From Klebsormidium nitens (Eukaryota; Plantae; Klebsormidiophyceae), in the NCBI GenBank assembly GCA_000708835.1, contig DF236973.1, forward strand, positions 1-64,000: a stretch of 64,000 nt of DNA, written 5' to 3'. How positions within the stretch are numbered: the stretch's first letter is position 1; each line of letters opens with the position of its first letter. The translations under genes and the position numbers were made by a program. Positions 40,428-63,042 of the stretch are shown here, in pieces. The notes under the pieces are model-generated. The model ran no database searches, was not told the DNA's origin, and was given only the letters and a program-made list of their open reading frames with translations.

Positions 40428-43400
40428 ATGGTGGCTTTCAACAACAACGTGGCGTTTGTGCTGCTGGCATTGCTCGCATTGTATGGGGCCAAGCCGGCGC
40501 AGGGGCAATCTCCTGTGTCACTGTCATGCCCTCCCGGGTATCTGGTGCAAGCTGCCCGTAACGTCCCAACGTAAGCATTTATAATGCAAAAGTATGTTGC
40601 TTGAATTTCAGAGCTGCAGGTTTCAATTGCCCTCTTCTTCGCAAAGTCATTTGCCGCAGTAAGTTTATGCAGATTTGGCTCTAGTGGCAGAACTTGAATC
40701 TACTCCTCCAAGTTTTTACATGGGTATTCTATGTGCCTTTTCAACAGTGCACAGACCATATTTCGGGTCACAGGCGCCACCCCAATGCCGCAGGTTCACG
40801 CCATATTCAGGAATGCTGTAGAGTGCCAATCTCTGAACACAATTCAAAGAAGTGAGACTCCTGGGTTAGGAGGCATTGGTGTGTTGAGCTTTGAGACAAT
40901 GGCATGCAGTGTGTGCAGGTCTTTGGCAAGCTACTCACTTTCTTTTCTTGCTCTTTCAAAGGTATACATGCACGACCGACCCCTGTTATGAGAACCCTTG
41001 TGGTCCTGGTGAGTACGCTCTGATGCTTCCACTTCGTTGTTTTTGGGAATAAGCAAGCATCCCCTATCCCGCTTAAGTCAAACCAGCATACTGCAGACAC
41101 GGTATTATTAAGATAGAGCTGGTGAAGATAATGCAGGAACGAAACCCCTCAGAACGAATGCCTGCACTGACCAGCACTGAGCAGACCTTAGGCTGCTTCG
41201 ATCCTGCTTTCACCAGGCTGCTTTTGTCTGAGCTGCAAACACAATTTCTCTCTGACGCCGCTGAATTGGGGGTGCTCTGAGGTGCCTCTGCCATCGCACA
41301 CTTAAAGTGCAGTCAAGCTTGCAAGGAGTTTGCGTTGTGTGCTGCAAAGGGATTCCCTCCATCAATCTGTCTGGTTAAAGAAAAGTCGTTGCTCAAACAT
41401 TCTCCTTCTCATCCTGCAACAAGCAATGCCTGCTCTTGGTTGCAGGTAACACCTGCGACTACTTTCAGAACGTTTTTGGAGTGATTGCAAACTGTACGGT
41501 GTGCAATCCTCCCTACACGCGGAGCGCCTATGTCATTGGCTTTCCGTATTTAGTGCCCACAGGGGTCTGCTACTTGCCCGGTGAGTTGCGACAAGCTGGA
41601 TTCACCGCTCCGGCAACCCGTTAGGCTTGCAATCTGCTCAAATGGGCACCACACTTGTGCATATAACGAGGCTGAATTGACAGCAGTCTCTTTCCTGTCA
41701 ACTCCCACATTGAGTGGCCAGTACCATGATGGAAATCTTCAGCACTTCCCCAAGAGGTTCTTCGGGAAAGCCTTCAGTACCTTAAAGAAAGGGTCTTGGT
41801 CGTAGGGAAAGTGCTGGCTCTCACTCTACCTGAAGTGAAGAGGACTTAAATACTTGGGATCTGTCTTTGCAGGCCAAGACGTATGCAACCCCAACCCCTG
41901 CCAGAATGGTGGCGTTTGCTCTTACAGAACAGACGGTTCAGGACAGCCCGTGACTGACGAGCAAGGGACCAAGTTTGTTTTCCAGTGCAACTGTAGCAGC
42001 ACTGGCAAGACTGGGCGAACTTGTACCGACGAGTGAGCCCCTCCCTTATAAGAGAACTCGGCAGGCTTGATTCTGCAGGCCCTTCATAACTTCAATCCAT
42101 CATCTGAGGCCTTTTTCATGCATCTTCCAGCTTGGCAAAGCTTGAATCTAGCTGCGAGGTTAGCATGAATCTGGACCAGCTAACCTGCCGATGACCCACG
42201 TCAGCGATGTCCGCTGTGCTGGCAAACCAGCGTGTGCAACCAAATCCGCTTGAAGAGCAATGGCACCTTCAGTAGTTCATTTATTGTTCGAGGGCATCTT
42301 GCTTTCAGTAATCTGTCGACTTTTCTAGACATCTGAGGCGTTAATATCCAGAAAGAGGAGGCACCCAAAACGGGCTGCTTTCAGGTCTTTATACTGCACT
42401 GCTTTGGTGTTTATCAATCTGAGCCTGGACTAACTCGTTGCTCGCAACAAACCGCATGGCCCCGCTCTTGGTCACAAAGGAATCGTACGAAAATTGTTTT
42501 CACTCCTGGCCGCCTCGATGTTTGATCAACTGGCTTTAATTCCTCAGCATAACAAACCCTCTGACGTCCATTTGGGCTTCCTTGGCAGACAATCGTTCCC
42601 CCCTAACAACTGTGTCTCCTCCTCCTCAGGATTGTCCAGACTCCCAGACCGACTGCTACCGTCAACGGCGTTTCGGGACCACTTGCGTTTCCCGGTGAGG
42701 CGCTCTGACCCCTCCACCTCGTTCAACGTTGAGATAGGCTTAGTCCTGCTCTGGCGAATCATGAGGCAGTCGCTCTTGGGAGAAATTGCTCAAGATTGAG
42801 AAAGTCTTGTGGTCGATTCATCCACGTCGAAAGTCAGCTCACCGCGTTTCCGCTCCAGCAGGACCGAATTACTGTTGTCTTTGCGCAACTCATTTTGCTG
42901 CAGTCACTTCTCGTGAGACGCTTGCTTGCTTATTTGGCTTCCCCCAGAAGTACCGCCTGCTTGCTTCAAGCATCGCCTTAAGTCTGGTTGAACCTTAGAG
43001 CGAGATTTTGTCGCAAGTCTGTTAAGGCAAAGAAATCCATTGGTTTCACAACGGGACGATGTCTCAGATCCAGCCTTTAGACATCAACAAGATAAGCAAC
43101 ATCTGTCCCATCATAAGGTACGGCAGAGCACATAGGGTAGTTCGTTACTCATGAAGGCCAGCGGCAGCTAACCCACCTCGGGTTGGTGGTGAACCACTGG
43201 TGGTAACGGGCTGGTTAGTTGCTGGTCTTTCGTTCAAAAAGCAGCTCAAGGTCGTACCCAGGATTGTAACAAGGCTACAGCTCGGTCTTGTCCCCGCTAA
43301 CTAGACACGTGGCTGGTTATCCAGCCTGGTTAGTCGCAAAACCCCCCGCAGCTGACCGTCTGAACCCTCCACTCCTTACAGCCGGGGTCTGCGGTGGTAC

Positions 43401-45984
43401 TTCGATCGGGTGCATTTACGCTGACGGGAACCATTATCTTTGCTGCACTGGAACCGCGAGCGGTACCGGGTTTTCCGAGTGCGGTCCCCTTGGTCCCGAC
43501 GGTGTACCCGTCTGCCCTGGCGAGACTTTCACGCCGACTCCCAACGATTACCCCCCGCCGGTTCCGGCGCCAACTCCTCAGCCCGAGGTTCCACTGCCAA
43601 CCGGTGATCAGGGTAAGCGCCACGTCAAGGGTGTTTGTATTGTGCCGACATTCAAGATTTTTGGGGCGTCTACTTCAACTGACTCACTGCTTCTTATTGA
43701 TGATCTGGAGAACGTGTTGTAATCTCCACGGACTTCCGAAGTGTTGTTTCAGTCTTTCTTGTCAGACTGTCAGCCGCTTCTGAACGGCATGTCTTCGAGC
43801 GAAACGGTGCCGCTCTCCGTACTCTGCTTCTGCTCTTGGCCGTCCGTAACCCTTTATTTACACCGTATATTCCGCTTGCATTTTGACACCTTAGAGCTTG
43901 ACCTGGAGAGCCTAGGACCTTAATGTCAATCAATGAGTTCTGCTTGGTTCATGCCCTGTGAAAGCATTGTCGTTCTGAAGTCGAGAACGGTCCTTTGTGC
44001 GTCATCTCGTGCTGTCCGCTTGATGCCGGGGCGATGAAAGAGAGGTCGACCCTTCCGCCCCTTCGAAGGAAATGCTCGCTCGAAGACGTCTGCTCTCATG
44101 AGCTTCTGATCTCTTCCTTTTCAGGGGTTTGCGGCAGCGGACCCGCGGCTGACTTCCCCTTTCGCTGCTGGTTCAACAACGACCCCCAGGGCCGCTACGT
44201 GTGCTGCGACGCGGGAGGCTGCAACGGCTTCAATCCTGGCCTCGGGACGCCGCGCTGCAGAGACAACGGCTACGTGCCGCCCAACAACGGAGTGGGCGGG
44301 CCGACCCCCCCGAGCACTCCCCCGAGCACTCCCCCCAGCACTCCCCCCAGCGGAGATCAGGGTACGTGAAAACCAGCGACCAGTCTCTTCCGGGTTGTGT
44401 TGGTCCCAGGTGCCGTTGATTGTGTCAGAATCGACTAATGCCCAGATCGCAATGAGGTAGCTTCTGAATGCGAGAAGCAGAGGTTGGTTATGATCCTGGA
44501 GTACGCCAGTCACGCGCAAGCAGGAAGTAGGCTTTCAAGCAGGTAGCAAATTAGTCGGACTAGCGCCCGGCCCTGCTAGATGTATTTTGGCACGGGCTCT
44601 GAGGCTGCCCAAAGGGCTCGTAGGCGTCCAGTCCTTCTGCAAAGTTTTGGCCTTTGATCACTTTGTTTCTGGTTTCTTTCCTCTCTGCTCCAGGGAGCAG
44701 AAGCGCCCTTGTGGCAGACTTTTTACGACGTGGACGCCACCCTCGCTCGGGTCAGCGGCGCCCTGTTCAAGAAAGCCTCATCTTGACTGATGCCAGTTCG
44801 TCGTTTTCCGTCAGGAGTTTGCGGGGGCGGGGCTGCGTCTGACTTCCCGACGCGCTGCTATTTCAACAACGACCCGCTTGGGCGTTACGTGTGCTGCGAC
44901 GGGCAGGGCTGCGACGGCTTCAACGCCGACAACCTGACGCCGCACTGCAAAAACTTCGGCTACGTGCCGCCCAACAACGGACTGAGCGGGCCGACCCCCC
45001 CGAGCACTCCCCCGAGCGGTCCCCCCAGCGGTCCTCCCAGCGGCTCTCAGGGTAAGCCACGTGTCCTGCACTTGGAGGTCCGGCCTCGGTCTGAGCGGTC
45101 CTGGTCTTCCGGTTACTTCCGGTAACTCGCCGAGCACATCTAGACACGGACCTAAGAGTCGATTGCTCACTTGAATACACTTTAGTCCCAATGAAAGCCG
45201 TGCCGGTTTTTTCAAGTGTTCTCAAAAGGGATCACGTACGAGCCCCATCTTACCAGAGACATTGGCGACCTTCGAGCACTGCCGCAAGCCCAGACTCGCA
45301 GCCCTAAGATCTGCATCCAAGCCTTCGTCTTTCATTAAAGTCAGGTTACTCTCTTTTCTTTGACTTTTTTGAGGATTGCGTTTTAAATCTGAACACACGA
45401 CCTGATCGAGGCAAGTCATCGGCTGCGTGGGCAGGCAAACGCTTGCTTTGCGGATTATTTCGACCCTCGGCTACTTGTGTCTAGAGGCCAGGCGTCGGAA
45501 ACGATTTCCTTTGAACCCCAGGAAAACGAAAGAGCGACCGTTTCAGCACTTTGAAATAGCAAACTTTGTGACGAGCGTCTTCCTTTCCCGTCTTAAACAA
45601 GTAGCCGGGAACGCTTTCTCGATAAAGAACGTGGCCGAGATCGTTCAGCGCAAGACTACAAAGTTCCGTTTGGTTCCGCGTGCTAGGCCACCGAGGTCGC
45701 TGCCTGCGAAATCGCATCCCTTACGAAGACCCGAACACGCAGTGCGCGCATCCATATTTGCATTACGCTCTTCGACTCACAGCTGCCTTGATTTCGTACC
45801 CTCTGCAGGCGTGTGCGGAACGGGTGGTGCCACAGACTTCCCGGTGCGCTGCTGGTTCAACAGCGACCCCCAGGGCCGCTACGTGTGCTGCGACAACGAC
45901 GGGTGCAACGGGTTCAACCCACCGGATTACTCGTTCCCCCGCTGCAAGACCAACGGTTATGTGCCCCCTGGGTTCGGAGTCTAG
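40428..45984 (+). CDS. Secreted EGF-like + tandem six-Cys (knottin-like) module protein, array copy 1 (476 aa, 9 exons)
   Basis: Exons 40428-40570, 40962-41008, 41446-41580, 41873-42032, 42630-42694, 43382-43612, 44125-44361, 44815-45051, 45809-45984 are all GT-AG and sum to 1431 nt in frame. Signal peptide MVAFNNNVAFVLLALLALYGAKPAQG. EGF-like domain CNPNPCQNGGVC..CNC..TGRTC. Four C-C-CC-C-C modules with PSTP linkers. The exon structure is replicated in two paralogs. Confidence 0.9.
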
Positions 45985-46871
45985 TCAACTGGTCAACGAC
46001 GTTCCTATCACACGCATCCTAAAGTTTTGCACCGTGTTCCGCTGGTTAGTGCGTGCAACTTCGAAACAGTAGCTATTTATTGTCGAGGGCCCCCTTACCA
46101 CTATTATATGGTTCGCTTTTGGTAGCCCGGCTGGTCCGACTTACGATATGTAGAGACCCTTATAAGTGCGGAATAGGTGGAGGTGTTCAACCAGAACAAC
46201 CAAGGCACACCCGGAATAAGGCCAGCTTATGAAACCTTAACGAGTCGTTTCTTGGCATAAAGGAATCTTTTACAAGTTCAAGTACCTAGATTGCTGTCTT
46301 TCAACAGATAGGCAAATGGACTCGTGATCCTTGATCCAACGTCGAATGCGAGAATCCGAGTTGTCGTAGTTATCAGTGTCCCATGTACCTAGAGTATTGA
46401 TGACGCAATCATCTGAAAGAGGGGTGTCCAGCTTAGAAGTCCATCATTTAACCCACCAACACTGACACAATACCCGGAGTCACATTAGACAGCTAACTTG
46501 GCAAGGTGCAGAATTCTTTAAAAGCCTCTTTGTCATATATCGCACTGTTGCTTAACGATCGTGTTGCTTGACACAACGCCATCATCACATGCAATCAAAA
46601 CAGAAGTCACTGCAATTTGCACTTCCTCATGCTCGTCAAGCAAAGATATCTAGGATTAGCACTTCTGATCACACGTCTAACACAGACAATGCATGGTGCT
46701 ACTTGTTTGCCCTTGCCTCGTCCCCAATGGGGACTCCTAGGTAACTTCCCGAAGTTGAGTTACATAAGTGTAATTTAGGTACTTCTTACATTTTAGATGA
46801 TGTGCTAGTTTCGGATTAGTCAATTGCCAGGGAGTTGCAACTCTTAAAACTCTTAAAGCAATGCGTAATTT

Positions 46872-47445
46872 GCCAAACCAACTCAATGTTAAAAAGCAAG
46901 TGCAACATGAGCATCTCACACGACCGGAAGCGGCGGCCGTGAAAACTTGACAATGGCCTCGCACTTTGATAGTGCTCTGTACTCGTGCGGCCCTTTTGAG
47001 GTTTAAAGCTCTGGAAGGGCTTGGAAGCTAGCACGCGGGTCTTCCTGGCTATGACTACAAAGCAGCAAAGGAATAATGGCGGCAGGTCTTGATAACGAAA
47101 TGGGGCCTCCCTTTTCGATTTGAACTTGAACCTTCAAGGTCAAAGCTCAACGACGTGCCACGTTGGCGGGTGGTAAAGGAATTAGCCAATAGTCTCTCGA
47201 ATAAAGGTTTAGCCTTACCGCGAAGCTGCAGTGACATACCGGTACCAATACAACAATACAACAACAACAATATACAAAGCATGGCGTTGGCCAAGCCAAC
47301 TCAATGTCAGAAAGTGAGTGCCATGCAGCACCTCAAATGTCAATAATACGACCAGAAGCGGCGGCTGTGAAGAGATCCCCACGGCCGACGAAACCTGACA
47401 ACGCCAATGGCCTCGCACCTAATGTGCTCTGAATTGCTCGTGCGG
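46872..47445. repeat. Degenerate ~120-150 bp direct repeat in the copy 1-copy 2 spacer
   Basis: GCCAA(A/G)CCAACTCAATGT..CGACC(G/A)GAAGCGGCGGC..CAATGGCCTCGCAC..CTCGTGCGGC at ~46872-46990 and ~47289-47445. Confidence 0.7.
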
Positions 47446-47762: not shown

Positions 47763-48531
47763 GCAAAAGGGACAATCTACACTATTATATTAGTGTCTCC
47801 GGTCGATCTGTCAGAGTAAATACTCTCACAGGGCGTCAATCTGTGCAGGCATTGGCTAATGGTCTGACATGTGTCAGAGTGATCTGTTTGCTTGGATGCG
47901 GGAGTCCTCTTTGACCGGGCACCGGCATGGTACCGAGCTACTTCCCTTGGGACCTCTCAGTTTCCCGGTGACACGGCATACTGCACACTGCACAGTCACT
48001 GCCTTTTCACTCACAGTCACAGTCACAGTCACAGTCTAGGTACCTCTTAAAGTGTCCAGTGTCAAGACTCAAGACCCACAGCATGAGTTACAGTTGGTTT
48101 TCGGCAGGTAAAAAAGCGCCGCAGCTTACGGTCACAATTAAGGTTTAAGGTGTCTCAGTCTCAGTCACAGTTACAGTCTCAACCACAGTCACAGTCACGT
48201 CAATCATAAAACAAAGTTAACAGTCACAGTCACCCGATAACAGTCTCAACCACAGTCACAGTGTCAATCATAAAACAAAGTTAACAGTCACAGTCACCCT
48301 ATAACCCTATTAGGTAGCTTGAAAAGATTCAAACCTGATTGACACAGAAAGATGTGGCGGTCGTCTAGCTACCCGGCCAGCGATAGCAAGTGCCCAGATG
48401 ACCGCTGTGCAGGTGTGGTACCTACCGGCCAGCTTCATAGATTTGTTCATTTATGGTCGCGGCACGGGAGGGTGTTAACACCGAAGATTTTCCGGAGACA
48501 CTAATATTATAGTGTACTTTGTCCTACTTGC
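47763..48531. mobile_element. Non-autonomous Mutator-like (MULE) element, 769 bp, ~40-bp TIRs, 9-bp TSD
   Basis: TSD GTCACTGAG at 47754-47762 and 48532-48540. TIRs 47763-47802 and 48492-48531 match at 34/40. The interior has (CACAGT)n and a ~60-bp direct repeat (48173-48235, 48240-48299). The element is absent at the homologous site upstream of copy 1. Confidence 0.8.
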
Positions 48532-48989: not shown

Positions 48990-51900
48990 ATGGTGGCTTT
49001 CAACAACAACGTGGTCTTTGTGCTGCTGGCATTTATGCTCGTATTGCATGGGGCTCAGCTGGCGCAGGGGCAGGCTGCTGAGGTGTCACTGTCATGCCCC
49101 GTCGGATATCTGGTGCAAGCTGCCCGTAATGTCCCAACGTAAGTGCCATTTCTTGAGGCAAAGATATGTTGCTTGAAGATTAGAGCTGCAGGTCTCACTT
49201 CCACTTCTCCTCTACAGATCAATGTGCCGCACTCGATTCTGCAGACTTAAGTTGGCTCTAGTGGCAGAATTTTGATTGCCAGTTAATGCTCCAGGATTCC
49301 ACATGGGCATTGCCTAAGTACCTTTAAACAGTGCAACGACCATTGTTTTGGGCTACAGGCCACCCCCATGCCTCGGGTTCAAGCCACATTCACGACTGCC
49401 ATAGACTCATAAACTGCTAACCTCTGTAACCAATCTCCGCCCACACTCCAGAAAGCCAAACTCAATTAGAAAGAATCAGAGTTTTGAGGTTTGCGACGTC
49501 AATGCCGTGCACTGTGTGCAGGTCTTTGGCAAGCTACTGACTTTCATTTCTTGCTCTTTGAAGGTATTTTTGCACGACCGACCCCTGTTATGAGAACCCT
49601 TGTGGTCCTGATGAGTGCGCTCTGATGCTTCCACCTATTGGAAAATCAAGCAAGCATCCTTGTCGTCAAACCCGCAAACTGCCAACGAGGTCTAAGCTTA
49701 CTGTGAAGCTGGTGAAGATACTGCATGAATTGAACTTCTCAGAATGAATGCCCGTGACCAGCACTCAGCAGACCCTTAGACTGCTTTTATCCTGCCCTCA
49801 CAAGGCTGCTTTTATCTGAGCTGCAAGCACACTCCTTTCTGGCGTGGCTAGATGTGGGGGTAATCTGAAATGCCTTTCCTATCATCCTTGAGTACAGTCA
49901 TGCTTGCAAATGGTTTGCCTTCTTTGCTGCAAATGAACTCCCACCCACAATCAGTCTGGTTGGAACTCAGCATTCTACTCAACATCCTGCAACAAGCAAT
50001 GCCTGCTCTTGGTTTGCAGGTAACCCCTGCGACAACTTTCGATACAGTTTTGGAGTGACTTCCAACTGTACGGCGTGTAATCCTCCCTACAAGAGGGGCA
50101 CCTATATCATCGGTTTCCCGGACATAGTGCCCCTTGGGGTCTGCTACTTGCCCGGTAAGTTGCGGGACATCAGGTTCAAAGCTTCATAGCCCGCTAGGCT
50201 TGCAAAAAATTGCTCAAAAGGGCACCACAATTGTGCACATACGGAGGCTGAACTGACAGAATGGATGGATGGAGAACAGGGACTCCCGGCGGGCTCCCTA
50301 CTGGACCCCCTTCCAGCATAATCCTTCGATCGACGGTCAAGATTGATGGTTTTGATCAACCTCGACCGTTGATCAAAAGGGGTTATAGCTAGGAGGGGTA
50401 TCTAAATATCGGCTTGGGAGTCCATGTTCTCCCTCCTTCCGTTCTGACAGTAGTCCTTTTTCTGTCGACTCAAATATGGATCGGCCAATACCATAACGGA
50501 AATCTTACAGCCTTCCCCTAAGAGGTTCTTCAGGAAAGCCTTCAGTACCTTAAGGAAAGGGTCTTGGGTAGTAGGGCTGGGTCTCACTCAAACCCCAGAC
50601 CCTTGAACTGAAGAGGATTTTCATATACATTCACACTTGGGGTCGTTCTGCGCAGGCCAAGACGCATGCAACCCCAACCCTTGCCAGAATGGTGGCGTTT
50701 GCTCCTACAGAACGGACGGTTCAGGGCAGCCCGTGACTGACGAGCAAGGGACCAGGTTTCTTCTAGGGTTTTGCAACTGTAGCAGCACTGGCAAGACAGG
50801 GCGGTTCTGCGCCGACGAGTGAGCCCCCTTAACAGGCTTGTGTTTGCAAGCCTTTCAAGAGTTCAATTGACGAAGTGCGTTTCTATCATGCATCTTTCAG
50901 CTGAGCAAAGTCTGGACTAGCTAACCGTTCGAAGACCGACAACAGCGGTATCCGTTGTGCTGGCAAACAGAGGTGTTTCACCAGAATCGCTCGTTGACGA
51001 GCAATGGCACCTCAGATAGTTCAAGGGTTTTCTGAAGGCATCTTGCTTTCGTGGTCTATAAGCAGTCGACTTTTGCTGGCATCTGAGGCGTTGATATGCA
51101 GAGAGAAGAGGCATCAAACGGGCTGGTTTTAGATCCCAGTACCTCACAGCTGGTTGTGTACTGGACAAACCTTTAGTCGAGCTTGGACTAACCCTTTGCT
51201 CGAAACAACCGCATGCCCTCTCTCTCGGTTACAGAGGACTCGTACAGATTTCTTCCACTGCCGGCCACCTCGTAACCGCGTTGGGCAATCAATTGGCTGC
51301 ACGTTTAAAGTTCCTCAGCACAACACTCGTCTGATATTGTCCGGTTGGGCTTCCTTGGCCGTGAATCTTCCCTTCAAAAACATGTCTCCTCCTCCTCAGG
51401 AATGTGGAGGCTCCCATACCGACTGCCACCGTCAACGGCGTTTCCGGACCACTTGCGGTGGCAGCAAGTGAGGCGCTTTGAGAAGTTCAAACTGTTTACT
51501 TTCGTAGGACATGTAACTTTGGCTAGCAAAGGGTGGAGGCACCCACTCGTGGTTGCTAGCTCAACTTTGAAAGTGTTTTACGGTCAGTTCGTCCTAGTCA
51601 AAGAACAGCGTTTTCTTACCACGGGTTCAGACAACATAATTCTAGCACGTCTAATTTGCTGCCGCAACTCGTTCTGTTGCCTTCGCTTCTCGCGAGACGC
51701 TTGCTGGATCATTTGGCCCCCGAAGAGTGCCGCCTGAGTGCTTCAACAATCAAGCGGAACTGCAGGTTCCACAAAGAGACGGTATCAGCTCAGATCCGCT
51801 CTTTGGACATCAACGATATGGTCTTATGTCAGAGCGCACAAGGTACTTTTGTGCCCATGAAGGGCGAGCGAGAGAATCTCGCAGCTAACTCACCGGGTTT

Positions 51901-54813
51901 TAAAACCACTGGTCCAAATACGGGCTGATTAGATGCTGGTTTCAACATCGAAAGGCAGGTTCGAACGATAACCAGAGTCGTAACAAAGCTACAGCCCGGT
52001 TGTGTCCCCGTTAACCAGACACGTGGCTGGCTATTCAGCCTGGTTAGTCGCAAAACCCCTCGTAGCTGACCATCTGAAGCTTCGAAATTCCACTCCCTGC
52101 AGCCGGAGCCATGCTCTGCGGCCAAGCTTTTGCGATCGGCTGCCTTTACCCTGACGGGAAGCACTACACTTGCTGCACCGGTGCCGTGAAGGGTTTCGGG
52201 CTCTCCGAGTGCGGTCCTGTTGGTCCGGACGGAGTACCCATCTGCCCTAGGGAGGGTTTCACGCCGACCCCCAATGATTTTCCCCCGCAGACTCCGCCGC
52301 CGACTCCGCAGCCCGAGGTTCCACTGCCAACCGGCGATCAAGGTAAGCGCCACGTTGAGGGTATTATTGTTGCGCCGATCTCCAGCGGATCCAACGGATC
52401 TGGGAGTTTAGGCGTCGACCCTTGACTGTTTGACTGCTGTGATCTGGAAGACGTGTTCATGAGTACTCCGTAAATTGCACGAGCTTCCGAAGTGCGGTCG
52501 CTTATTGTCTTTTCTTGTTAGACGGTCAGCCGCTCCTCATTGTCATCCCTTCGAGCGAAACGGTGCCGCTCTACCTACAGCTCTTTTGCCCTTGGCCGTC
52601 CAATCCTTTACTCACACAACCTATACCGCTGGCATTTTGACATCTTAGCGCTTGACCAGGATGAGCCTAGAACCTTAATTTGAATCATTAAGTTCGGATC
52701 AGTTCACGTCCAGTGGAATTAGCGTTTCTGTGCTAAACTCATCGCTTGTGCGTCATCTTGTGTTGTCCGCTCCATTCCTGATCCTACGAATCCGACGAAA
52801 GGGAGGTCATCTCTCCGCCCTTCTGGTAGAGCCCAACTAACGCTGGCTCGAAGACGTCCGCTCTCCATGAGTTTCGGATCTCTTAATTTTCAGGGGTTTG
52901 CGGCAGCGGACCCGCGTCTGACTTTCCCTTCCGCTGCTGGTTCAACAACGACCCCCAGGGCCGATACGTTTGCTGCGATCGGGAGGGCTGCAACGGCTTC
53001 AATCCTGGCCTCGGGACGCCGCGCTGCAGAAACAACGGCTACGTGCCGCCCAACAACGGAGTGAGCGGGCCAACCCCCCCAAGCACTCCCCCGAGCAGTC
53101 CCCCCAGCGGAGATCAGGGTGCGTTGATCCTACCGACCCAGTCTCTTCCGGGTTTAGTCTCGCCTGACTGCCCTTGACTCTATTCGTGCACGCTTGACTG
53201 TTTCCAAAGCTAAAGAGGGACATCTACTGTCTTAGCTCTTGCAACGAGCTAGCTCGTGAATGTTGCGAGCCTTACGTTGGTGATAAATTTGAGATGCTTC
53301 AGTATTGTGTCACGGAAGGTGGTTGATTTTCGAGCCTTGTCGAGCGGGTGGCAAGATTTCGAGTATCGTTCTGCCCTGCGAGACGTACTTTCGCACAACT
53401 CTCTTGTCTTCACAGAGGGCTTGCAGACGTCCCATTTTTCTACAAGGTTTCTGGTCTTCAATCGATCCTTCTCTGGTCGACTCCCTTCTGCTCAAGGGCA
53501 GCCGAAGGCTGTTTGGGAAACTTCTTCACGTTAACGCCTCTCTCGCTCGAGATCAGCACCCTCTTCGAAACAACTCACTTCAACTCATACCAATCCTTCC
53601 CCTCCGTCAGGCGTTTGCGGCGGCGGGGCCGCGTCTGACTTCCCGACGCGCTGTTATTTCAACAACGACCCGCTTGGGCGTTACGTGTGCTGCGACGGGC
53701 AGGGTTGCGACGGCTTCAACGCCGACAATCTCACTCCGCACTGCAGAAACAACGGCTATGTGCCGCCCAACAACGGGCTGAGCGGGCCAACTCCCCCGAG
53801 CGGCTCTCAGGGTAAGCCACGTGTCCCGCATTTGGAAACTCCGATAGCAGTGTGAGCGGTCCTGGTCCTTTCGGCTACTTCCCGAGCACGAGTCAGACGA
53901 CCCGGGCTCAACCGTTGGTTTCTCGTTGAAAATACTGATCTCCGGTGAAAGCAGTGGCGGTCCGTCGGGTGATCTCGGGCAATTATTCACGGTATAAAGC
54001 GCCCCTTTTTAATAGGGACCTAGTAGTTCTCGAGCATCCTGCCAAGCCTTCGTCATTCGTTAGGGTCAGGTTGACTTTTTGAGGATGGCATTTCAGAATT
54101 GGACATACGACGGCGGAGAAATACGTCATCATTTGCATGGGCAAACGCTTGCTTCGCGGGATCCTTCGATCGTCGGCCGCTTCTTGCCCTTGGAGACCAG
54201 GCGTCGAGACCAATCTCCGTAAAAACACCACGGACGAAGAAGCTACCGTGTCAGCATTTCAAAAGAGCAGAGCTTGTGACGACCGTCCTCGCCTCCCTGG
54301 CCAAGCCTTTGTTGAGAAGTGCCTGCAGAAACAGATTTCTCCATTTCCAAGGAGCTTCAAGGAGCTTCAACGTTTCAACTGCCAGTCCTCGTTACCTTGG
54401 TCGAGCGCCGTTTCTGACTCTCTTCCCTCCTTGAAGACGCTTTTTCCGAAGAAGAACGTGGTCGAGATCATCCAACGCAACAGTACGAAACCGTCCAATT
54501 CCAGCGTCGCAGCGTGCTAGGCCGCCGAAGTCCCTGCATGCAACAACTATCCAATTACAAGACCCGAACACGCAGTGTGTGCATCCACTTTCAAACAATT
54601 TCCAATTCACAACTGCTTGTTTTCGTATCCTTTGCAGGCGTATGTGGAACGGGTAGTGCCACAGATTTTCCGGTGCGCTGCTGGTTCAACAGCGACCCCC
54701 AGGGCCGCTACGTGTGCTGCGACAACGACAGGTGCAACGGGTTCAATCCGCCTGATTTCTCGTTCCCCCGCTGCAAGACCAACGGCTATGTGCCTCCTGG
54801 CTTCGGGATCTAG
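48990..54813 (+). CDS. Secreted EGF-like + six-Cys module protein, array copy 2 (467 aa if normally spliced; exon-2 donor mutated, possibly pseudogenising)
   Basis: Exons 48990-49138, 49564-49610, 50020-50154, 50656-50818, 51400-51467, 52103-52342, 52894-53118, 53611-53811, 54638-54813 sum to 1404 nt in frame with no internal stops. The intron after exon 2 begins ATGAGT (49611), whereas copies 1 and 3 have GTGAGT. Confidence 0.8.
50257..50446. mobile_element. Fold-back MITE (~190 bp) in intron 3 of array copy 2
   Basis: The ends CAGAATGGATGGATGGAGAACAGGGACTCCC and the reverse complement of GGGAGTCCATGTTCTCCCTCCTTCCGTTCTG match at 27/31. Internal arms are also inverted. CTGACAG is duplicated at 50253-50259 and 50444-50450, and the homologous copy 1 site has a single TTGACAG and no insert. 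Exact TSD length is ambiguous. Confidence 0.7.
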
Positions 54814-55921: not shown

Positions 55922-56193
55922 CAGTGATTGCCACCAACTTTGGCCGGCGCCGGCAATCTACCGGCCACCCTTCGTTCCTGCCGGCTGAGTGTAAGTTTCT
56001 ACCGGCTTCCCCCAAGTCCCCGGATCCATTTAGCCGGGTATCTGGACAGTCTCTCAGCTAATCTCAGCCGGTACCCGGTCAAACACGCCGGTTTTTCAGC
56101 CGGAGCCCAGCCGGCTGAGTGCCTTCGGCACCGGTTAGACCCTCGCTCCAGCCGGCTAGGTCCACACACAACACCGGTTCGTGGCAATCACTG
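55922..56193. mobile_element. hAT-like MITE, 272 bp, 13-bp perfect TIR, 8-bp TSD
   Basis: TIR CAGTGATTGCCAC at 55922-55934 and its reverse complement GTGGCAATCACTG at 56181-56193. TSD GAGCGGAC at 55914-55921 and 56194-56201. The interior is dense in CCGG motifs. An 8-bp TSD with a CAG terminus is typical of hAT elements. Confidence 0.85.
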
Positions 56194-56402
56194 GAGCGGA
56201 CTGGATCCAGGCCCCGGGGGAGCTACCGCCCTCCTGAATGGAGTGACAAAACGGTGGGCGGTACCCCGTACCGAGCATTCTCAGGTTAAGTCTGGGTTGA
56301 GTCACCCTCTAATCATTATGGCCGAGCCCATGTGGCCACGCACACGTACGAGTCACTCGACCGAGGGCCGAGTCACGTCATCGGGATCACCTTGCTAGTA
56401 CC

Positions 56403-56790
56403 GTACTGATATAAATAAAGTTTAATACCTATAAGGCATTGTGACCTATAAGGTACTGTATTGTGTAAGAGGACTGTACTTTTAATGATTGCGCGGTCGT
56501 ACCCCGCGCTGCGCGGTGCGTACCCGCGAAGCAGCCGGGCCTACCCTGGGACATTAGGGTCTCGCAAGCAACCGGGTGACAAGAAGGCCCTCCCTCTGAC
56601 ATTAGGGTCTCGCAAGCAGCCGGGTGACAACCGGGCACTTCCCAGTAACATTAGGGTCTGTCGGTCACATTACCCTAGGTTTTTAGTGTTTGCCCGGGGC
56701 CTCACATGCACAGTATTCCTCTACGGTTGAAAACGAATTCCTTATAGGGAATGTACCTTATATGTATTAAACTTTATGGTTATCGGTACT
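56403..56790. mobile_element. Probable fold-back/MITE-like insertion (~390 bp) upstream of array copy 3
   Basis: Imperfect ~50-bp inverted arms: 56403-56453 GTACTGATATAAATAAAGTTTAATACCTATAAGG versus the reverse complement of 56740-56790. There are internal tandem copies of ACATTAGGGTCTCGCAAGCA(A/G)CCGGGTGACAA. No clear TSD was found. Confidence 0.55.
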
Positions 56791-57197
56791 GAGCACTCAT
56801 GAGCACATCGCGATAAAGTTGGTGGCAAGCACTGGCAATTAGCAGTCTCGCCTGTACCGGTATTGTACACTTCTTTCCTCAACAGTCAAGGCTCGTGCAG
56901 TGCTGATTGAAAATCTATCTCAATGATGAAGGTTGAGACACCGTCTAGCTGGCATTGTATGAGTTGTTCTGCGGCAAGGACGCTGCTGAACCGGCCCTGG
57001 GCTTCAGTGTCTCATCAAGCGCTGGTTGGTCCTTTGAAAAGCACGCACTGAAGGACCTTATACGCCATTGGCATTGCATATCACACACCACCGGCAGAGC
57101 GGGCTGGGACGTCAGTCCTCTTGCAGCAGAAAACGCAGCTTTCCTCGTCTTTCCTTCCCGCATCTGGAAATATTGTGCAGTGGCGCAGCTGTGCGCA

Positions 57198-60100
57198 ATG
57201 GCGGCTTTCCGTAACAATGTGGTGTTTATGCTGCTGGCATTGCTCGCACTGCAGTCTGGGACGCAGCCTGCGCAGGGGCAACCTTCCGGTGTGACAAAGT
57301 CATGCCCTCCCGGATATCTGGTGCAGAGCAATCGTGGGGGACCCGGGTAAGCACTTTTGACGCAGGCGAAATTATGATTGGGAGCTGAACTCACCGGCAT
57401 TTCTCCCCTGCAAAGCTGGCAACTCTTGTATGGATAGAGGTCAGGTTTCAGTCATCCCGCAGTGACTAGATTGACATGGAATGTCTGTCTGGGCAGTGCG
57501 CTGACTTTGACGGAGGAACCAGATTGAGCTGACATGTGCCTCATAGCTCACCTTCGAGAAACATGTGCATACTTTCTCAGACTATCTTGGATTAAACTCT
57601 GACGCTTGCCAGAGACTCAAGGGTCTACTGCACCACCGCAAGGAGCTTGGTTTAGATGGTGCCATAAAGCATTCTTATCCGGGTCCTGATTTATAATGAG
57701 CTTTGTCCTTGACAGGTCCTTCTGTACTCCTGATCCTTGTGTTGGGAACCCTTGTGGTCCTGGTGAGTATGTTTAATGTTCCTTTCTTGCCTTAGAACCG
57801 TCAGCAAGTTTACTTTACCATCCAGCCATTCTCACCGCAGCATCCTCAATGAGTCATGAATAAGCTTTCAAGCTGGTGGCAACTCAAAAGAAGACCTCAC
57901 AACAGGAGTGTTTATGGTCAGGGCTGTACAATTGTCGATTGTTCAGACTTTTAGCAGCTTTTAGTTTTGCAAACAGCTGCTTGAGTTTAGCAACATACAA
58001 GCATTTTCATTTGCTTCCTTTCTCTATCTGGCAAATATTTGTGGGTGGACTGATGAGACCTTGTCACAACATATACATGCAGTCAATGTTGAAAGTTCTT
58101 GTCTCCCAGTTCAGATAGACTCCCTCCATTCCAAACTATATGATTGAAGAGAAGAAGCACCCTTCACTTGACCTTCTTAGAAATGACCTTAATGTGTTTG
58201 CCTGCTCTTGTCTGCAGGTAACACATGCAGTATCCAGGGGTCATTTAATGGACCAGTTCCTGATTGTGGTTGCAACCCTCCGTACAAGAGCGGCGTTATT
58301 CCAGGTCAATTCAACTACAGAGTCTGCTACATCCCTGGTAAGTGAAGGGCCGCCAAAGGGCACTGATTTGACTCGTTCCTGAGAAGCGCCAAAGTTGCTG
58401 TTTAGTGGATACAAGGGTTCAAATGATTGGGGCTAGGAAACTCCTCTAAAAGCGCTTACTTGAGGAGTTGTTGCAAAGGCGGCCTGGTCTTTTCACTGGA
58501 CTGCGAAGGAAGAATTTGATCTTGATTGGTTGAGATATGACCCTGCGGCATGGTTAATCAACCTACATTGTGCTCCAATGAAAAAGCCAGGTCTTTCTGC
58601 CTTGCATTTCAGTATCATGATGCTCTTTTCGTGGATTCAATCTATTTGCTTTTTCTGCTCAAAGATCTTCATCGAGTGCCGTAAACCTCAATTCGAATGT
58701 CCTCACTAAATCTCAAGAATACTACAATGGTCTCAAAGTATCTGTTTTAAGGTAAGTTATCCCTTTCTTGGAACTTGCAAAAGCTGGACAACGTTACCGA
58801 GACTTAGGTGTTGTTCAACCAAGTATCACATAAATGGCTGGTTAAACCACTCATTGTCAATCCTGCTGAGATAGTGATGACTACCGTTTTGCCAATTGGG
58901 GCGTCGCTCCTGTTTGCGAATCGTGCTGCTTCACGACTGGTCTTCACCCAAGACTGATACGGAAGCCTATTACCAGCACTTCTCTAAGTCTCCCTGGTTA
59001 ACCCGACCAAGGTTAACCATGCTCATTACTGGTCGTTCCTTGCATGTCCAAGTAACACCTGTGCTGTTCATGTCTGCGCAGGCCAAGACGCTTGCAATCC
59101 CAACCCGTGCCAGAACGGGGGCACATGCATCTACAGGCAGGGCCCTCTGGGTGAACCCCTGACAGACGACCAAGGAACTAGATACGCTGCCCGATGCGAT
59201 TGCGGCCCCACTGGGTTTACGGGACCGACCTGCAGCGACCCGTGAGTCAATCTTTCATAAGCAAGGTTGACAATGTGCAGGGTTCTCTCACGTGATCCGG
59301 GTTCATTAGACTCGGCCTTGCATGCGTCGGGCTTGGAAATATCAAGGCTTGTGTATTTATCTGAAATTCTGGTCAGATGAATGCAAAAGCGTCGCTGATG
59401 ACCTCCAGCAGAGAACTTTGTCGTGCTGACGACCCGAGCCTAGGCTAGAAGCGCTCATGCGAAGCGCACTGCCAGCTCGAGTACTGGGGATCGGTTGAAA
59501 CGCTAGCGTCACAGGAAGCTCTCGATGCTTCTAGAGTTTTGTCATCTGTGCAAGTCAAACCCTGTGTAAGGATTTCAAAGCGACGAAGGGGAGCCGTCAG
59601 AAGGGACTGAATTTGAGTCCAAAACGGTGCTTTTTCGAAGTTCTGCATGGTATCCAATCAGACAATCAGTGGAACATCGGCACACCCTTTCGCTCGATAT
59701 TGTGTATGGATTTCTGTTCCTCCTTTCTTGGTCACGGACTCTTTTAACCACTTCGTCGTTCAGGCCCGCTACCACTTGCGATGCACTGGCCGAATGACTT
59801 GGTATCTTCTCATCGCCCTTACCAAGAACTTCTGTCAGGCTCTCTGCGTACCAAGAGTGTTATGCCAAACGCTGTTTCTCCCTGTCTGCAGGTTCCGGGA
59901 AAGCCCCCCTGTGATTGCTACTGTAAACGGCGTGTCGGGCCCACTTGCGAGGGCATTGCTGGGTGAGGCGCTCTAACTCATCCAACAACGAGGATAAACA
60001 AATGCTCGCTTTCAAACCGAAGCTGTCACCGAAGCTGTCAGGAAACACACTCACTGCTTCTGACACTTCTTACCCTGAGGAGGTTGCTTGAAAGTGACCC

Positions 60101-63042
60101 GAGTCCTTTGCTTTGTCACATCCGAAACGATTGGAGGAGTCTACGTCCTCAAAGGACTTCAAACATACGCGCTCTCATGCGCCCGAATCGATTGGTTCTG
60201 CGCTCTGATTGATTGCGATGGCTTCCGATGCGAGTGCCGGTCGCCTGTTTGCATCGGCACCCTCGAGCTCACTTTCTGACTTTGTCAAGCATCGGCCAAG
60301 GCTCGGTTGCACTTGTTGAGAAGGAGTCTAAGACATCTTGTCGAGAGGAAAGCCCCGAAGAGTTGGGGCGCGCTTGGATATGCTGGTGCCCACAACCATG
60401 GTTTCTCCATTGTCCTGTAGTGAATCGTCGATACCAGAAACGGCATCATTCGGAATCCTGACACGAGGCAAAGGGCGCTTACTGAGCATTGTCGGTTGAG
60501 AGCAAGCCAGGACGTTTTGCAGCTGACCCTTCGCCTCGTTGCCATGCAGAATTCATCTGCGGCTCGAATAGCCTCCCGCCGATTCCCTGCCTTTACGCGA
60601 GCGGGAAGCAGTTCATCTGCTGTGCCGGATCCGAGTGCGGTCCCATTGGCCCAGACGGAAACACCCCCATCTGCCCCGGCGAGGGGTTCACCCCGTCCCC
60701 CAATAACTACCCGGCGCCAACTTCGCCGACTCCTCAGCCCCCTCCACCGGGCAGTCAGGGTAAGCGCGCTGTTGAGTAATTGTACCAAGCTAGACTGTCA
60801 GGACGTTAGGGGGCGTTATCGTCGATCTGATTCACTGTTTCTGTTGCAAAACTTAGAAGACGCGTCTTGGGGCATTTGTGGGACCTGCACAAGCGTTCAG
60901 ATTGTTGTCGTTACTTCTCAGCTTGTCAGCCGTGTTTTCCTTGGACAAAACGGTTCCGGTTCCGTCGACGTCCTTTGATCTTGCTCTTGGCCGTCCGCAG
61001 CCCTCCGCTCACGCGATGGAGTCGGCTCGCTCTATTGCTCTACCTTGGGGCGTGACCATGACCCGAAAAGCCTGCTTCTGCCCTAATCTGGTCCGTTGTT
61101 CTTGATCGCAGACCTGCGAGGAAGGCTTGTTACAGTTCATTTGTATCAAAAGAACGTTCGTTTGTTCCCGTTTGCTGTCCGCTTGATGCCGACGCGAGGG
61201 GAAGGAGGTCGTTCCTTTCTGACGACCGTATCATAAACGCACGCCATCCTTCGAACTTTCCTCTTCGCTTCGTCGCATGATACTTCAACGCCCTTCATCA
61301 CACATATTCATTTCCGTCAGGAGTCTGCGGAACCGGGGACGCCTCGCCGTTTCCCAACCGCTGCTATTTCAACAACGACCCCCAGGGACGGTACGTGTGC
61401 TGCGACAACCAGGGCTGCGACGGTTTCAACGCCGATAATCTGACGCCGCACTGTAAGAACAACGGCTACGTGCCGCCAAACAACGGGCTCAGCGGGCCGA
61501 CTCCCCCGAGCACCCCCCCGAGCACTCCTCCGACCGGAGACCAGGGTACGTGGAAATCACCGACCAGTGTTTTCTCTGATGCGATCTGTTGCACGTATTT
61601 GTGCAAGCTTGTCTGGTAAAGAAAGCTGGAGTGAAGCGCTGCACCTCTGTTCCGCGTGCGCAATGAAAAGCTTGCAAATGCTGCGGGCGGAAAGGTAATG
61701 AGAATTTCGAAGCGCATTGTCTGCCCCGAAAGGACTTGGAAGTTCGAGCCTCGTCAAGCCGATATGGCTAGCATTCTGCCCCGCTCATGTAAGGCGTGCG
61801 TCTGCAGCAGGCAGTCCTTCCGCAAGGCTCCAGGAAACTGTTACCCTTTCGCTTGGGGATCAAGGAGGACTCGTTTACATTGATGGTTGTTCCAATCGAT
61901 CCAATCTTTACGTTCTTCACAACCGCCCGGTTTGACACATGCCAATTCTTCCCATCTGTCAGGCGTCTGCGGAAGCGGCGCAGCCGGCGCTTTCCCCACG
62001 CGCTGCTATTTCAACAACGACCCTCAGGGCCGCTACGTGTGCTGCGACGGGCAGGGCTGCGACGGCTTCAACGCCGACAACCTGACGCCGCACTGCAAAA
62101 ACTTCGGCTACGTGCCGCCCAACAACGGACTTAGCGGGCCGCCCCCCCCGAGCACTCCCCCGAGCGGTCCCCCGAGCGGCTCTCAAGGTAAGCCACGATT
62201 CTTGCTTGGACAAAACTTGCATATCATCTGAGCACGACTCTCAGGCGGAACGCACAGGGACCTCGAAATGAGTGACGCTAGCCCTCCGGTCGACTTTTCG
62301 GGCGACGTTCCGAGCCGCTCTTGACGTGAGAAGGGCGCGAGCGCTCTCCCGAGCACGTGGCAGCTCGGAGGCTGAACAAGGCGGCGTGACGCACTCCTTA
62401 ATAGGAATGGGTTCAGCTCGTTCCTGGCGTTTCGTGCAGCGGCTCCATCTATCGGTGATTGACTGCTAATGTAGGAAAAGGTTGTCAAAGAGCTTGCAGA
62501 GTGTCGGATCCTTGACCTTTTGACAGTTTGGAAATTCGCGATTGAATGCATCATGACAGCGATCAAATCTCAGAAGAGAGTAAGTTGCCGATTATGGCAT
62601 ACTTGGGCGAGCATCTGTCTAGTCAGCACGACCATCAGACCAGTTTTTCTCGACGTGCATTGCCCAAACACTCATGGCGCAAGCTCAGGGTCGAAGTGCG
62701 TAAAAGGTGAACGGCTCAAAAGCACATCAAATCCTAAAGCCCCGGAGCAAATGTGGGCTCCGGGGGCCCACATTTGTTGCTCCATGAATCGAGTCGGCTG
62801 ATACCATACTTGGAAGTCAAGAGCGTGGGTCCCTTGAGCCCCAATCCCATGTATCTTACGGTGCAGGCGTCTGCGGCACGGGTGGTGCCACCGACTTCCC
62901 GGTGCGCTGCTGGTTCAACAGCGACCCCCAGGGGCGTTACGTGTGCTGCGACAACGACGGATGCAACGGGTTCAACCCACCTGACTTCTCGTTCCCTCGC
63001 TGCAAGACCAACGGATATGTGCCCCCTGGGTTCGGTGTCTAG
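57198..63042 (+). CDS. Secreted EGF-like + six-Cys module protein, array copy 3 (469 aa, 9 exons)
   Basis: Exons 57198-57346, 57716-57762, 58218-58337, 59082-59241, 59892-59962, 60523-60759, 61321-61545, 61963-62187, 62867-63042 are all GT-AG and sum to 1410 nt in frame. Signal peptide MAAFRNNVVFMLLALLALQSGTQPAQG. Same phases and Cys pattern as copy 1. Confidence 0.9.

What the first reader, a model, noticed from the sequence alone, without database searches (positions are those of the whole stretch)
40428..63042. Tandem array of three unrecognised secreted EGF + multi-knottin-like proteins
Seen in sequence: three 9-exon paralogs (476, 467 and 469 aa) share intron phases. Each encodes a signal peptide, a CPPGY..C half-EGF, two EGF-like domains, a conserved linker and four six-Cys modules separated by P/S/T-rich spacers. 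I see no transmembrane segment, GPI-type tail or catalytic domain. Established knowledge: in land plants, EGF domains occur mainly in membrane proteins (WAKs, S-domain receptor kinases, vacuolar sorting receptors). Soluble EGF plus tandem cystine-knot architectures are more typical of animal matrix or adhesive proteins. Inference: this is a lineage-specific, rapidly evolving extracellular family, such as a multivalent glycan-binding or wall/mucilage adhesion protein, or a defence polyprotein. The array may continue beyond the window.
Basis: partly seen in the sequence, partly recalled or inferred. Interest (0 to 1): 0.85.

Follow-up and report, generated by a model that had tools for sequence, protein, structure and literature searches.

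The report
Secreted algal EGF plus six-cysteine-module proteins
Three neighbouring genes of the land-dwelling green alga Klebsormidium nitens encode secreted proteins with two EGF domains and four copies of a small six-cysteine domain that matches no described family; it is probably a wall- or sugar-binding tag, but that is untested.

Summary
The window is the first 64 kb of Klebsormidium nitens scaffold DF236973.1. It carries three tandem 9-exon paralogs on the + strand with identical intron phases. Each encodes a signal peptide, a Cys-closed hairpin, two EGF-like domains, a conserved linker and four C-C-CC-C-C modules separated by Pro/Ser/Thr spacers. No transmembrane segment, GPI-type tail or enzyme domain was found.

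- Copy 3 is 460 aa, not 469.
- Copy 2 has a G>A change at the first base of intron 2, so its 467-aa model needs an AT-AG intron. The public model skips exon 2, giving 447 aa and an odd number of cysteines.
- The array stops at three copies.
- The canonical modules are the most conserved part (dN/dS 0.02-0.2), not fast-evolving.

All three genes are already annotated as hypothetical proteins. No paper names them.

A profile of the module found only 28 representative proteins among 1.84 billion. Every named one is from K. nitens, and related K. subtile transcripts turned up in a separate search. The module folds confidently (pLDDT 90) but matches nothing in Pfam or among solved structures.

The same module sits on unrelated secreted proteins, usually behind a phase-1 intron. 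This scan has already reported the module on other DNA of this genome. The most likely role is a multivalent wall or glycan binder. That is inferred, not shown.

The parts
40428..45984 (+). Copy 1 gene (KFL_000240050 by position), 476 aa. Exons: 40428-40570, 40962-41008, 41446-41580, 41873-42032, 42630-42694, 43382-43612, 44125-44361, 44815-45051, 45809-45984.
   Evidence: Model built. All introns are GT-AG. A 476-aa public gene call covers the same span.
48990..54813 (+). Copy 2 gene (KFL_000240060, GAQ79076.1). The 9-exon form gives 467 aa. Exons: 48990-49138, 49564-49610, 50020-50154, 50656-50818, 51400-51467, 52103-52342, 52894-53118, 53611-53811, 54638-54813. The public form (447 aa) uses exon 1 = 48990-49125 and skips exon 2.
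57198..63042 (+). Copy 3 gene (KFL_000240070, GAQ79077.1), 460 aa. Exons: 57198-57346, 57716-57762, 58218-58337, 59082-59241, 59892-59962, 60550-60759, 61321-61545, 61963-62187, 62867-63042.
   Evidence: The model is identical to P0034.
49611..49616 (+). Defective donor of copy 2 intron 2. It reads ATGAGT where copies 1 and 3 have GTGAGT.
40428..40508 (+). Signal-peptide-like N-terminus of copy 1 (about 27 residues ending AQG|Q). The equivalents are 48990-49073 in copy 2 and 57198-57281 in copy 3.
   Evidence: Hydropathy scan and family alignment. No SignalP run was available.
40509..41580 (+). Copy 1 exons 1b-3: the Cys-closed 'SCPPGY...C' hairpin plus EGF-like domain 1, which is split over three exons.
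   Evidence: Conserved Cys columns. AlphaFold model with pLDDT 87. Model residues 28-78 align to fibrillin cbEGF at Z 2.9.
41873..42032 (+). Copy 1 exon 4: EGF-like domain 2 (CNPNPCQNGG.C ... C.C...G..C). The equivalents are 50656-50818 and 59082-59241.
   Evidence: Pfam EGF at 17.3 bits, below the 21.5 cut-off. Fold match to Notch1 EGF12 at Z 5.3, rmsd 1.4 A over 39 residues. Foldseek hits to Notch EGF arrays.
42630..42694 (+). Copy 1 exon 5: conserved linker (..ATVNGVSGPLA..). The equivalents are 51400-51467 and 59892-59962.
43382..43612 (+). Copy 1 exon 6: divergent six-Cys module 1 plus a Pro-rich spacer, on a phase 1-1 exon. The equivalents are 52103-52342 and 60550-60759.
44125..44361 (+). 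Copy 1 exon 7: canonical module 2 plus a (PPST)n spacer, phase 1-1. The equivalents are 52894-53118 and 61321-61545.
   Evidence: This module is the first row of the alignment used for the pLDDT 89.6 model.
44815..45051 (+). Copy 1 exon 8: canonical module 3 plus spacer, phase 1-1. The equivalents are 53611-53811 and 61963-62187.
   Evidence: dN/dS is 0.05-0.09.
45809..45984 (+). Copy 1 exon 9: C-terminal module 4 and the stop codon. The equivalents are 54638-54813 and 62867-63042.
   Evidence: dN/dS is 0.02-0.08 at dS 0.35-0.67.

Best explanation
Shown:
- These are three real tandem paralogs of a Klebsormidium-restricted gene family.
- Each encodes an acidic, cysteine-rich protein with a signal-peptide-like N-terminus.
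- The N-terminal head has a hairpin and two EGF-fold domains, followed by a short conserved linker.
- Four copies of a ~55-residue, well-folding six-cysteine beta module follow, joined by Pro/Ser/Thr spacers.
- Each module-plus-spacer unit is one symmetric phase 1-1 exon.
- The same module is attached to unrelated secreted proteins of this alga.

Inferred:
- The module is a small disulfide-locked binding domain for a cell-wall or matrix polymer, most likely a glycan.
- It would be used the way fungi use CBM1 and plants use hevein. As a single copy it would tether other proteins to the wall.
- Here, four copies on flexible and probably hydroxyproline-O-glycosylated spacers would make a multivalent binder.
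- Such a binder could cross-link wall or mucilage polymers, or stick cells to each other or to a substrate. The EGF head would be a second interaction surface.
- Copy 2 carries a splice-donor defect and may be partly disabled.
For: Gene reality:
- The models have canonical splice sites and shared phases.
- They match the public gene spans.
- dN/dS is 0.25-0.29 overall, and 0.02-0.09 in modules 3-4 at dS 0.35-0.78.
- K. subtile Trinity transcripts and an intronless Logan contig are colinear across the exon junctions.

Secretion: there is an N-terminal hydrophobic segment, 38 Cys (an even number), and no other transmembrane-like or tail segment.

EGF: structural matches are almost exclusively EGF domains.

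The module as an autonomous domain:
- pLDDT is 89.6.
- Six Cys are invariant or nearly so, and six positions are at least 90% aromatic.

The module as a portable tag:
- The profile hits only 28 representative proteins. These include proteins with LDL-receptor-A repeats (28.6 bits, above the 24.1 cut-off), a DUF7933-like domain, unrecognised heads, and stand-alone module proteins.
- The phase-1 intron just upstream of the module is shared in unrelated genes.

Spacers: they vary by 12-nt PPST units, as glycosylated linkers do.

Position-specific conservation of modules 1-4 across copies argues that each position is functionally kept.

PMC6362431 reports that hevein-type lectin domains are absent from Klebsormidiophyceae, so that niche is open.
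Against: - No binding, localisation or expression data exist for these three genes.
- No similarity, in sequence or fold, to any known carbohydrate-binding module.
None of my 28 hits is an obvious enzyme.
- The spacers lack classical extensin SPPPP repeats.
Confidence: 0.45

Rival explanations
1. The modules mediate protein-protein contacts rather than glycan binding. The proteins would then be self-assembling or receptor-binding matrix scaffolds, or cell-cell recognition molecules, as with animal EGF-repeat matrix proteins.
For: The EGF head matches Notch, Delta and fibrillin-type EGF domains, which are protein-interaction modules. Modules keep position-specific identity. The family is old, since copy 3 split off before the K. 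nitens / K. subtile divergence.
Against: The module also occurs alone or behind very different heads. That fits a generic anchor better than a specific partner. No partner is known.
Confidence: 0.2
2. Defence polyprotein. The precursor would be cut in the spacers to release four knottin-like antimicrobial or protease-inhibitor peptides.
For: The Cys pattern is C-C-CC-C-C, and tandem repeats sit in one precursor. Multi-domain precursors of this type are known in plants (own knowledge).
Against: No dibasic or other conserved cleavage motif lies in the spacers. The only conserved spacer end, G-[DS]-Q-G, coincides with the CAG|G splice consensus. Spacer length is variable. No solved knottin matched the model. 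The mature proteins are acidic (pI 4.4-4.7), unlike most antimicrobial peptides. The module is also a single C-terminal tail on larger proteins.
Confidence: 0.1
3. The genes are decaying or non-functional duplicates, with no present function.
For: Copy 2 has a +1 G>A donor mutation. Its public model loses three cysteines. No direct RNA evidence was obtained here.
Against: All reading frames are open, and purifying selection is strong at substantial dS. Orthologous transcripts are expressed in K. subtile. Copies 1 and 3 have fully canonical splice sites.
Confidence: 0.05

Closest known systems
Animal-type tandem EGF domains (Notch / Delta / fibrillin / Del-1)
   Same: The head has two six-Cys EGF-fold domains. 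EGF2 superposes on Notch1 EGF12 at rmsd 1.4 A over 39 residues with 36% identity. The top Foldseek hits are Notch1 EGF 4-7 and EGF 20-24. The proteins are extracellular and soluble.
   Different: There are only two EGF domains. EGF1 is split over three exons and has a long insert and an extra N-terminal Cys-closed hairpin. The Pfam score is below the gathering threshold for the window's copies. No calcium-binding consensus is visible. The proteins sit in a streptophyte alga and are followed by an unrelated module array.
Small disulfide-rich carbohydrate-binding modules on Pro/Ser/Thr linkers (fungal CBM1, plant hevein/CBM18)
   Same: This is a functional analogy only. The module is a small Cys-stabilised beta domain with several conserved aromatic residues. 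It is joined by P/S/T-rich spacers, occurs in one to several copies, and is appended to many different secreted proteins.
   Different: No sequence or fold similarity was found. The Cys number and spacing differ. Binding is untested. Hevein domains are reported absent from Klebsormidiophyceae (PMC6362431).
Knottins / inhibitor cystine knots
   Same: The six-Cys pattern is C-C-CC-C-C, and the module is all-beta and small.
   Different: The module is ~55 residues with 11-12-residue loops, longer than typical knottins. No solved knottin matched the model. Knot connectivity could not be examined.
Other Klebsormidium nitens proteins carrying the same module (e.g. KFL_000730070, KFL_000420110, KFL_001800060/070, KFL_005790050, KFL_000620300/310, KFL_002360050, KFL_000010510)
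   Same: They share the module family (E down to 1e-31 per module). KFL_000730070, KFL_000420110 and KFL_001800060/070 also share the head, linker and module architecture.
   Different: They differ in module number (1-5), head domains and spacers. The three genes here form the only array I saw with four modules per gene in tandem.
Chimeric hydroxyproline-rich glycoproteins of green algae and plants (pherophorins, extensin / AGP chimeras)
   Same: They are secreted, with globular Cys-containing domains joined by Pro/Ser/Thr-rich segments that are likely O-glycosylated.
   Different: There are no Ser-Pro(3-5) extensin repeats and no pherophorin domain. The spacers are short, 10-25 residues.

Membership tests
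EGF-like domain (Pfam PF00008 / EGF fold) | Six conserved cysteines with C1-C2-C3 ... C4-x-C5 ... C6 spacing | tested here: met
   Invariant Cys columns are present in both EGF-like regions across 16 family members.
EGF-like domain (Pfam PF00008 / EGF fold) | Score above the Pfam gathering threshold | tested here: not met
   The window copies score 17.0-17.3 bits against a cut-off of 21.5. A paralog head, P0044, reaches 24.5 bits.
EGF-like domain (Pfam PF00008 / EGF fold) | Three-dimensional similarity to solved EGF domains | tested here: met
   The pLDDT 87 model gives Z 5.3 and rmsd 1.4 A over 39 of 39 residues to Notch1 EGF12. Nearly all 50 listed rows are EGF domains. Foldseek probability is 0.9-0.99 to Notch EGF arrays.
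Knottin / inhibitor cystine knot | Disulfide connectivity I-IV, II-V, III-VI, with one bridge threading the ring | not testable with these tools
   Model coordinates are not exposed. All six Cys are invariant or nearly so, so no covariation signal exists.
Knottin / inhibitor cystine knot | Structural similarity to a solved knottin | tested here: not met
   Foldseek against PDB gave no hit with E below 7. VIA-align gave no chain with Z >= 2 among 48,161.
Hevein / CBM18 chitin-binding domain | Match to the Pfam or PDB hevein profile | tested here: not met
   No Pfam hit for any of the 78 modules at E <= 5. No PDB sequence hit at E <= 10.
Extensin-type HRGP | Repeated Ser-Pro(3-5) motifs | tested here: not met
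   The spacers consist of 5-6 [ST]PP units per protein.
Klebsormidium six-cysteine module family (undescribed; noted earlier by this scan) | Significant match to the module profile, with the six Cys and the F..RC[WY]FN.DP.GRYVCC core | tested here: met
   All 12 modules of the window align. The profile retrieves 28 representative proteins, with per-module E values of 1e-12 to 1e-31.
GPI-anchored or transmembrane surface protein | C-terminal hydrophobic tail or an internal transmembrane helix | tested here: not met
   The proteins end ...NGYVPPGFGV. The only strongly hydrophobic 19-residue window is the N-terminal one. A borderline patch in copy 2 lies inside module 1.

The most novel reading that the evidence does not exclude
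The six-cysteine module is a new, Klebsormidiophyceae-specific carbohydrate-binding module family with a fold not yet seen in solved structures. It spread through the secretome by shuffling of a symmetric phase 1-1 exon, as animal extracellular modules did. It fills the role that hevein-type domains play elsewhere. On this reading, the EGF-4xmodule proteins are multivalent wall or mucilage cross-linkers that help this early land-dwelling alga hold its filaments and biofilms together.
Probability: 0.3. Interest if true: 0.7.

Novelty: new variant of a known kind. Interest (0 to 1): 0.5.

Why it matters
Klebsormidium is a key model for how green algae adapted to land, and extracellular matrix and adhesion proteins are central to that step. 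Here a lineage-specific, confidently folding domain with no known relatives has multiplied and been attached to many secreted proteins. It is often bounded by a phase-1 intron, and in this array each unit is a symmetric phase 1-1 exon, the exon type that built animal extracellular proteins. This is a plant-lineage example of modular matrix-protein evolution that can be tested directly.

If the module binds a wall polymer, it would define a new carbohydrate-binding family and give a useful probe for charophyte walls.

The practical gains today are modest:
- corrected gene models, namely a copy 3 length of 460 aa and the broken donor in copy 2;
- a defined domain profile;
- the finding that the family is under purifying selection rather than fast-evolving.

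Tried and rejected
I therefore did not use read laying and did not try another route.
- Joined spliced models: they were not sent to any search, fold or look-up tool. Searches were done exon by exon by reference, or with public proteins returned by the searches (P0001, P0034 and others). Exons were joined only inside local scripts, for translation, alignment, dN/dS and a tree.
- Copy 1 full-length protein: it has no reference id, so it was never searched or folded as a whole.
- Module searches that found nothing usable: Pfam on exons and on all 78 modules; PDB sequence profile; Foldseek against PDB; VIA-align wide; ESM Atlas by shape (the best TM-score, normalised to the query, was 0.44 over 33 residues); Atlas by features.
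- Literature: searches for the gene, protein and UniProt ids, for run ids, and for Klebsormidium with EGF, cysteine-rich, secretome or extensin terms found no description of the family.
- FAS1-like reading of the P0002 head: rejected, because Pfam gave no support.
- Array continuing past 64 kb: rejected.
- Gene conversion as the sole cause of the near-identical last module: rejected, because dS there is 0.35-0.67 while dN is 0.007-0.03.
- The 'type 2' C-terminal tail module of other Klebsormidium proteins: only weakly related (hhalign probability 67%, E 5e-5 over 27 columns). It is left as possible distant kin.
- Complex prediction: not used, because no specific protein pair is claimed to bind.


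Full report
**Where this is.** The window matches the first 64 kb of scaffold DF236973.1 of Klebsormidium nitens assembly GCA_000708835.1. Window coordinates equal record coordinates: the fetched locus overlaps the window base for base. Earlier scan notes had named the organism. I confirmed it through the accessions of the encoded proteins.

**Checking the observation.** I rebuilt the three gene models from the sequence, using paralog conservation and splice sites.
- Copies 1 and 2 align at 72-75% nucleotide identity, introns included. Copy 3 aligns with them only in exons, which marks the exon borders.
- Each copy has nine exons on the + strand, and the phases are identical in all three.
- Copy 1 is 476 aa (40428-45984).
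- My copy 3 model is identical to GAQ79077.1 / KFL_000240070.
- The public annotation calls genes over exactly these three spans, with products of 476, 447 and 460 aa.
- tblastn finds no other copy in the window or in the next 10 kb. The next two genes lie on the minus strand. One is a 548-aa protein without Pfam hits and the other is an ABC transporter. The array therefore has three members.

The donor of intron 2 reads CCTG|ATGAGT in copy 2, against CCTG|GTGAGT in copies 1 and 3.
- The 467-aa model therefore needs an AT-AG intron.
- By exact spliced alignment, I showed that the public 447-aa model (GAQ79076.1) uses an inner GT donor in exon 1 (exon 1 = 48990-49125) and joins straight to exon 3.
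- That model drops 20 residues with three cysteines, leaving 35 Cys. The nine-exon models all have 38.
- Joining the normal end of exon 1 directly to exon 3 puts a TAA stop codon immediately after the junction.
- A weak cryptic GT six bases upstream of the lost donor would keep the frame and all cysteines.
- Only RNA reads can say which form is made.

**Evidence that the genes are real.**
- All other introns are GT-AG with good consensus.
- dN/dS is 0.25-0.29 over the whole gene at dS 0.31-0.90.
- K. subtile Trinity transcripts (EukProt EP00243, P0035 and P0045) are colinear with the models across the junctions of exons 1-6, including exon 2.
- A Logan contig from run SRR9008758 carries an uninterrupted 510-codon ORF. 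It aligns to copy 1 residues 8-322 in one piece at 42% identity, as a spliced mRNA would.
- This is indirect support. It is not direct evidence that these three loci are expressed.

**Architecture of the head.**
- The first ~27 residues form the only strongly hydrophobic stretch and end in AQG|Q. There is no hydrophobic tail and no internal transmembrane-like segment. The mature proteins are acidic, with pI 4.4-4.7.
- Residues ~28-184 contain 14 conserved cysteines.
- An AlphaFold model of this region, built on a 16-sequence family alignment, has mean pLDDT 87.
- Its second domain superposes on Notch1 EGF12 (Z 5.3, rmsd 1.4 A, 39 of 39 residues, 36% identity).
- Its first domain aligns with fibrillin cbEGF domains (Z 2.9).
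- Almost every listed structural match is an EGF domain. The top Foldseek matches are Notch1 EGF arrays.
- Pfam EGF scores for the window's copies are below threshold (17 bits against 21.5). A paralog's head passes.
The 'half' is an extra Cys-closed hairpin in front of EGF1.

**The four modules.**
- Each canonical module-plus-spacer unit is one exon with phase 1 at both ends.
- The consensus is VCG.G.A..FP.RC.FNNDPQGRYVCCD..GC.GFN.....P.C..NGYVPP. Six cysteines are invariant or nearly so, and six positions are at least 90% aromatic.
- Module 1 is a divergent variant, 26-33% identical to the others.
- Modules keep their position-specific identity across copies: module 4 at 91-96% and module 3 at 89-96%. 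Module 2 of copy 3 resembles the module 3 type.
- Modules 3 and 4 are the most constrained part of the gene, with dN/dS 0.02-0.09 at dS 0.35-0.78. Exons 1, 3, 5 and 6 evolve faster, at 0.26-0.59. The family is therefore not 'rapidly evolving' in its modules.
- The spacers are built of [ST]PP units and vary in length by 12-nt PPST repeats.

**What the module is.**
- A profile of the 12 modules was scored against 1.84 billion representative proteins. It found only 28 at E <= 0.001.
- Every hit whose cluster I looked up and found named is from K. nitens. The rest come from unnamed metagenome or run assemblies. K. subtile transcript proteins turned up in the separate full-length search.
- A 78-sequence module alignment gave a confident model, with pLDDT 89.6 and four short strands.
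- Nothing matched it. I tried Pfam on every member, the PDB by sequence, Foldseek against PDB, VIA-align against 48,161 chains (none with Z >= 2), the ESM Atlas by shape and by features.
- Small domains score low on these scales, so this does not prove a new fold. It does show that there is no detectable link to knottins, hevein or any described family.

**The module is a portable unit.**
- In K. nitens it follows EGF heads of several kinds, LDL-receptor-A repeats (P0016, 28.6 bits against a cut-off of 24.1), a DUF7933-like domain (P0013, sub-threshold) and unrecognised heads (P0002, P0014). It also occurs as stand-alone one- to three-module proteins.
- Exact spliced alignment of three of these unrelated genes shows a phase-1 intron at or within 12 residues of the module start. 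That is what exon shuffling of a phase 1-1 exon predicts.
- A second kind of C-terminal six-Cys tail in some of these proteins is at best a distant relative (hhalign probability 67%).

**History of the array.** In a maximum-likelihood tree, copy 3 branches off before the group that holds copies 1 and 2, KFL_000730070 and the K. subtile transcripts (support 96/96). Copies 1 and 2 are a recent pair (100/100). The array is therefore old and has been retained.

**Most likely function (inferred).** I read the module as an extracellular binding tag for a wall or matrix polymer, and these proteins as four-valent binders or cross-linkers with an EGF head. The reasons are:
- the domain is small, disulfide-locked and rich in aromatic residues;
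- it hangs on P/S/T spacers;
- it occurs in one to five copies;
- it is attached to many different secreted proteins;
- it is strongly conserved while the spacers drift.

The same pattern is seen with fungal CBM1 and plant hevein domains (own knowledge). PMC6362431 reports that Klebsormidiophyceae lack hevein domains.

**Rival readings.**
- The modules make protein-protein contacts instead of binding glycans.
- The precursor is a processed defence polyprotein. This is less likely: there is no cleavage motif, the proteins are acidic, no knottin matched, and the module also occurs as a single tail on larger proteins.
- The genes are decaying. This is unlikely except perhaps for copy 2.

**Relation to earlier work.**
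- No paper names these genes or describes the family.
- UniProt labels them only 'EGF-like domain-containing protein'.
- This scan has already reported the same module on other DNA of this genome, including a note on this very stretch. One note (s1-261812) says a xylanase carries such modules. I could not test that here, and no obvious enzyme was among my 28 hits.

Joined spliced models were not sent to any search or fold tool. Copy 1's full-length protein has no reference and was not searched as a whole. RNA read mapping was not possible. No stretch was treated as human-like.

Noticed in passing
window 49611-49616: Copy 2 has a +1 G>A change in the donor of intron 2 (ATGAGT). The public protein GAQ79076.1 skips exon 2 by using an inner donor at 49125|49126, and so loses three cysteines.
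   Followed up: yes
window 35852-37366 (+): A long ORF with a strong NRDE-2 domain match (Pfam PF08424, E 1e-38) lies upstream of the array. It is probably one exon of an RNA-interference or nuclear RNA surveillance factor gene.
   Followed up: no
window 19463-20089 (+): An ORF matches the sulfate permease family (PF00916, E 1e-22). It is probably an exon of a SULTR-type transporter gene.
   Followed up: no
window 48173-48305 and 56550-56659: Intergenic tandem repeats lie just upstream of copies 2 and 3. One has a 64-nt unit (2 copies, 94% match) and the other a 48-nt unit (2.3 copies).
   Followed up: no
window 61321-61545 vs 61963-62187: Module 2 of copy 3 is 87% identical to the module 3 type but only 71-75% identical to module 2 of copies 1 and 2. 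This suggests an old intragenic exon duplication or conversion in one lineage.
   Followed up: partly
L003 (Logan SRR9008758 contig, 1622 nt): An intronless contig encodes a 510-aa protein with the same head, linker and module architecture, but ending in a different 'type 2' six-Cys tail. Copy 1 residues 8-322 align to it at 42% identity. The source organism is unknown.
   Followed up: partly
L006-L008 (K. nitens DF237185.1, DF236950.1, DF236970.1): Unrelated module-bearing genes (P0002, P0016, P0013) have a phase-1 intron at or just before the module start. P0002 and P0013 also have an extra intron inside one module.
   Followed up: yes
P0035 / P0045 (K. subtile transcripts): The K. subtile relatives have three modules where the K. 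nitens genes have four. Module number therefore changes between species, as symmetric phase 1-1 exons allow.
   Followed up: partly
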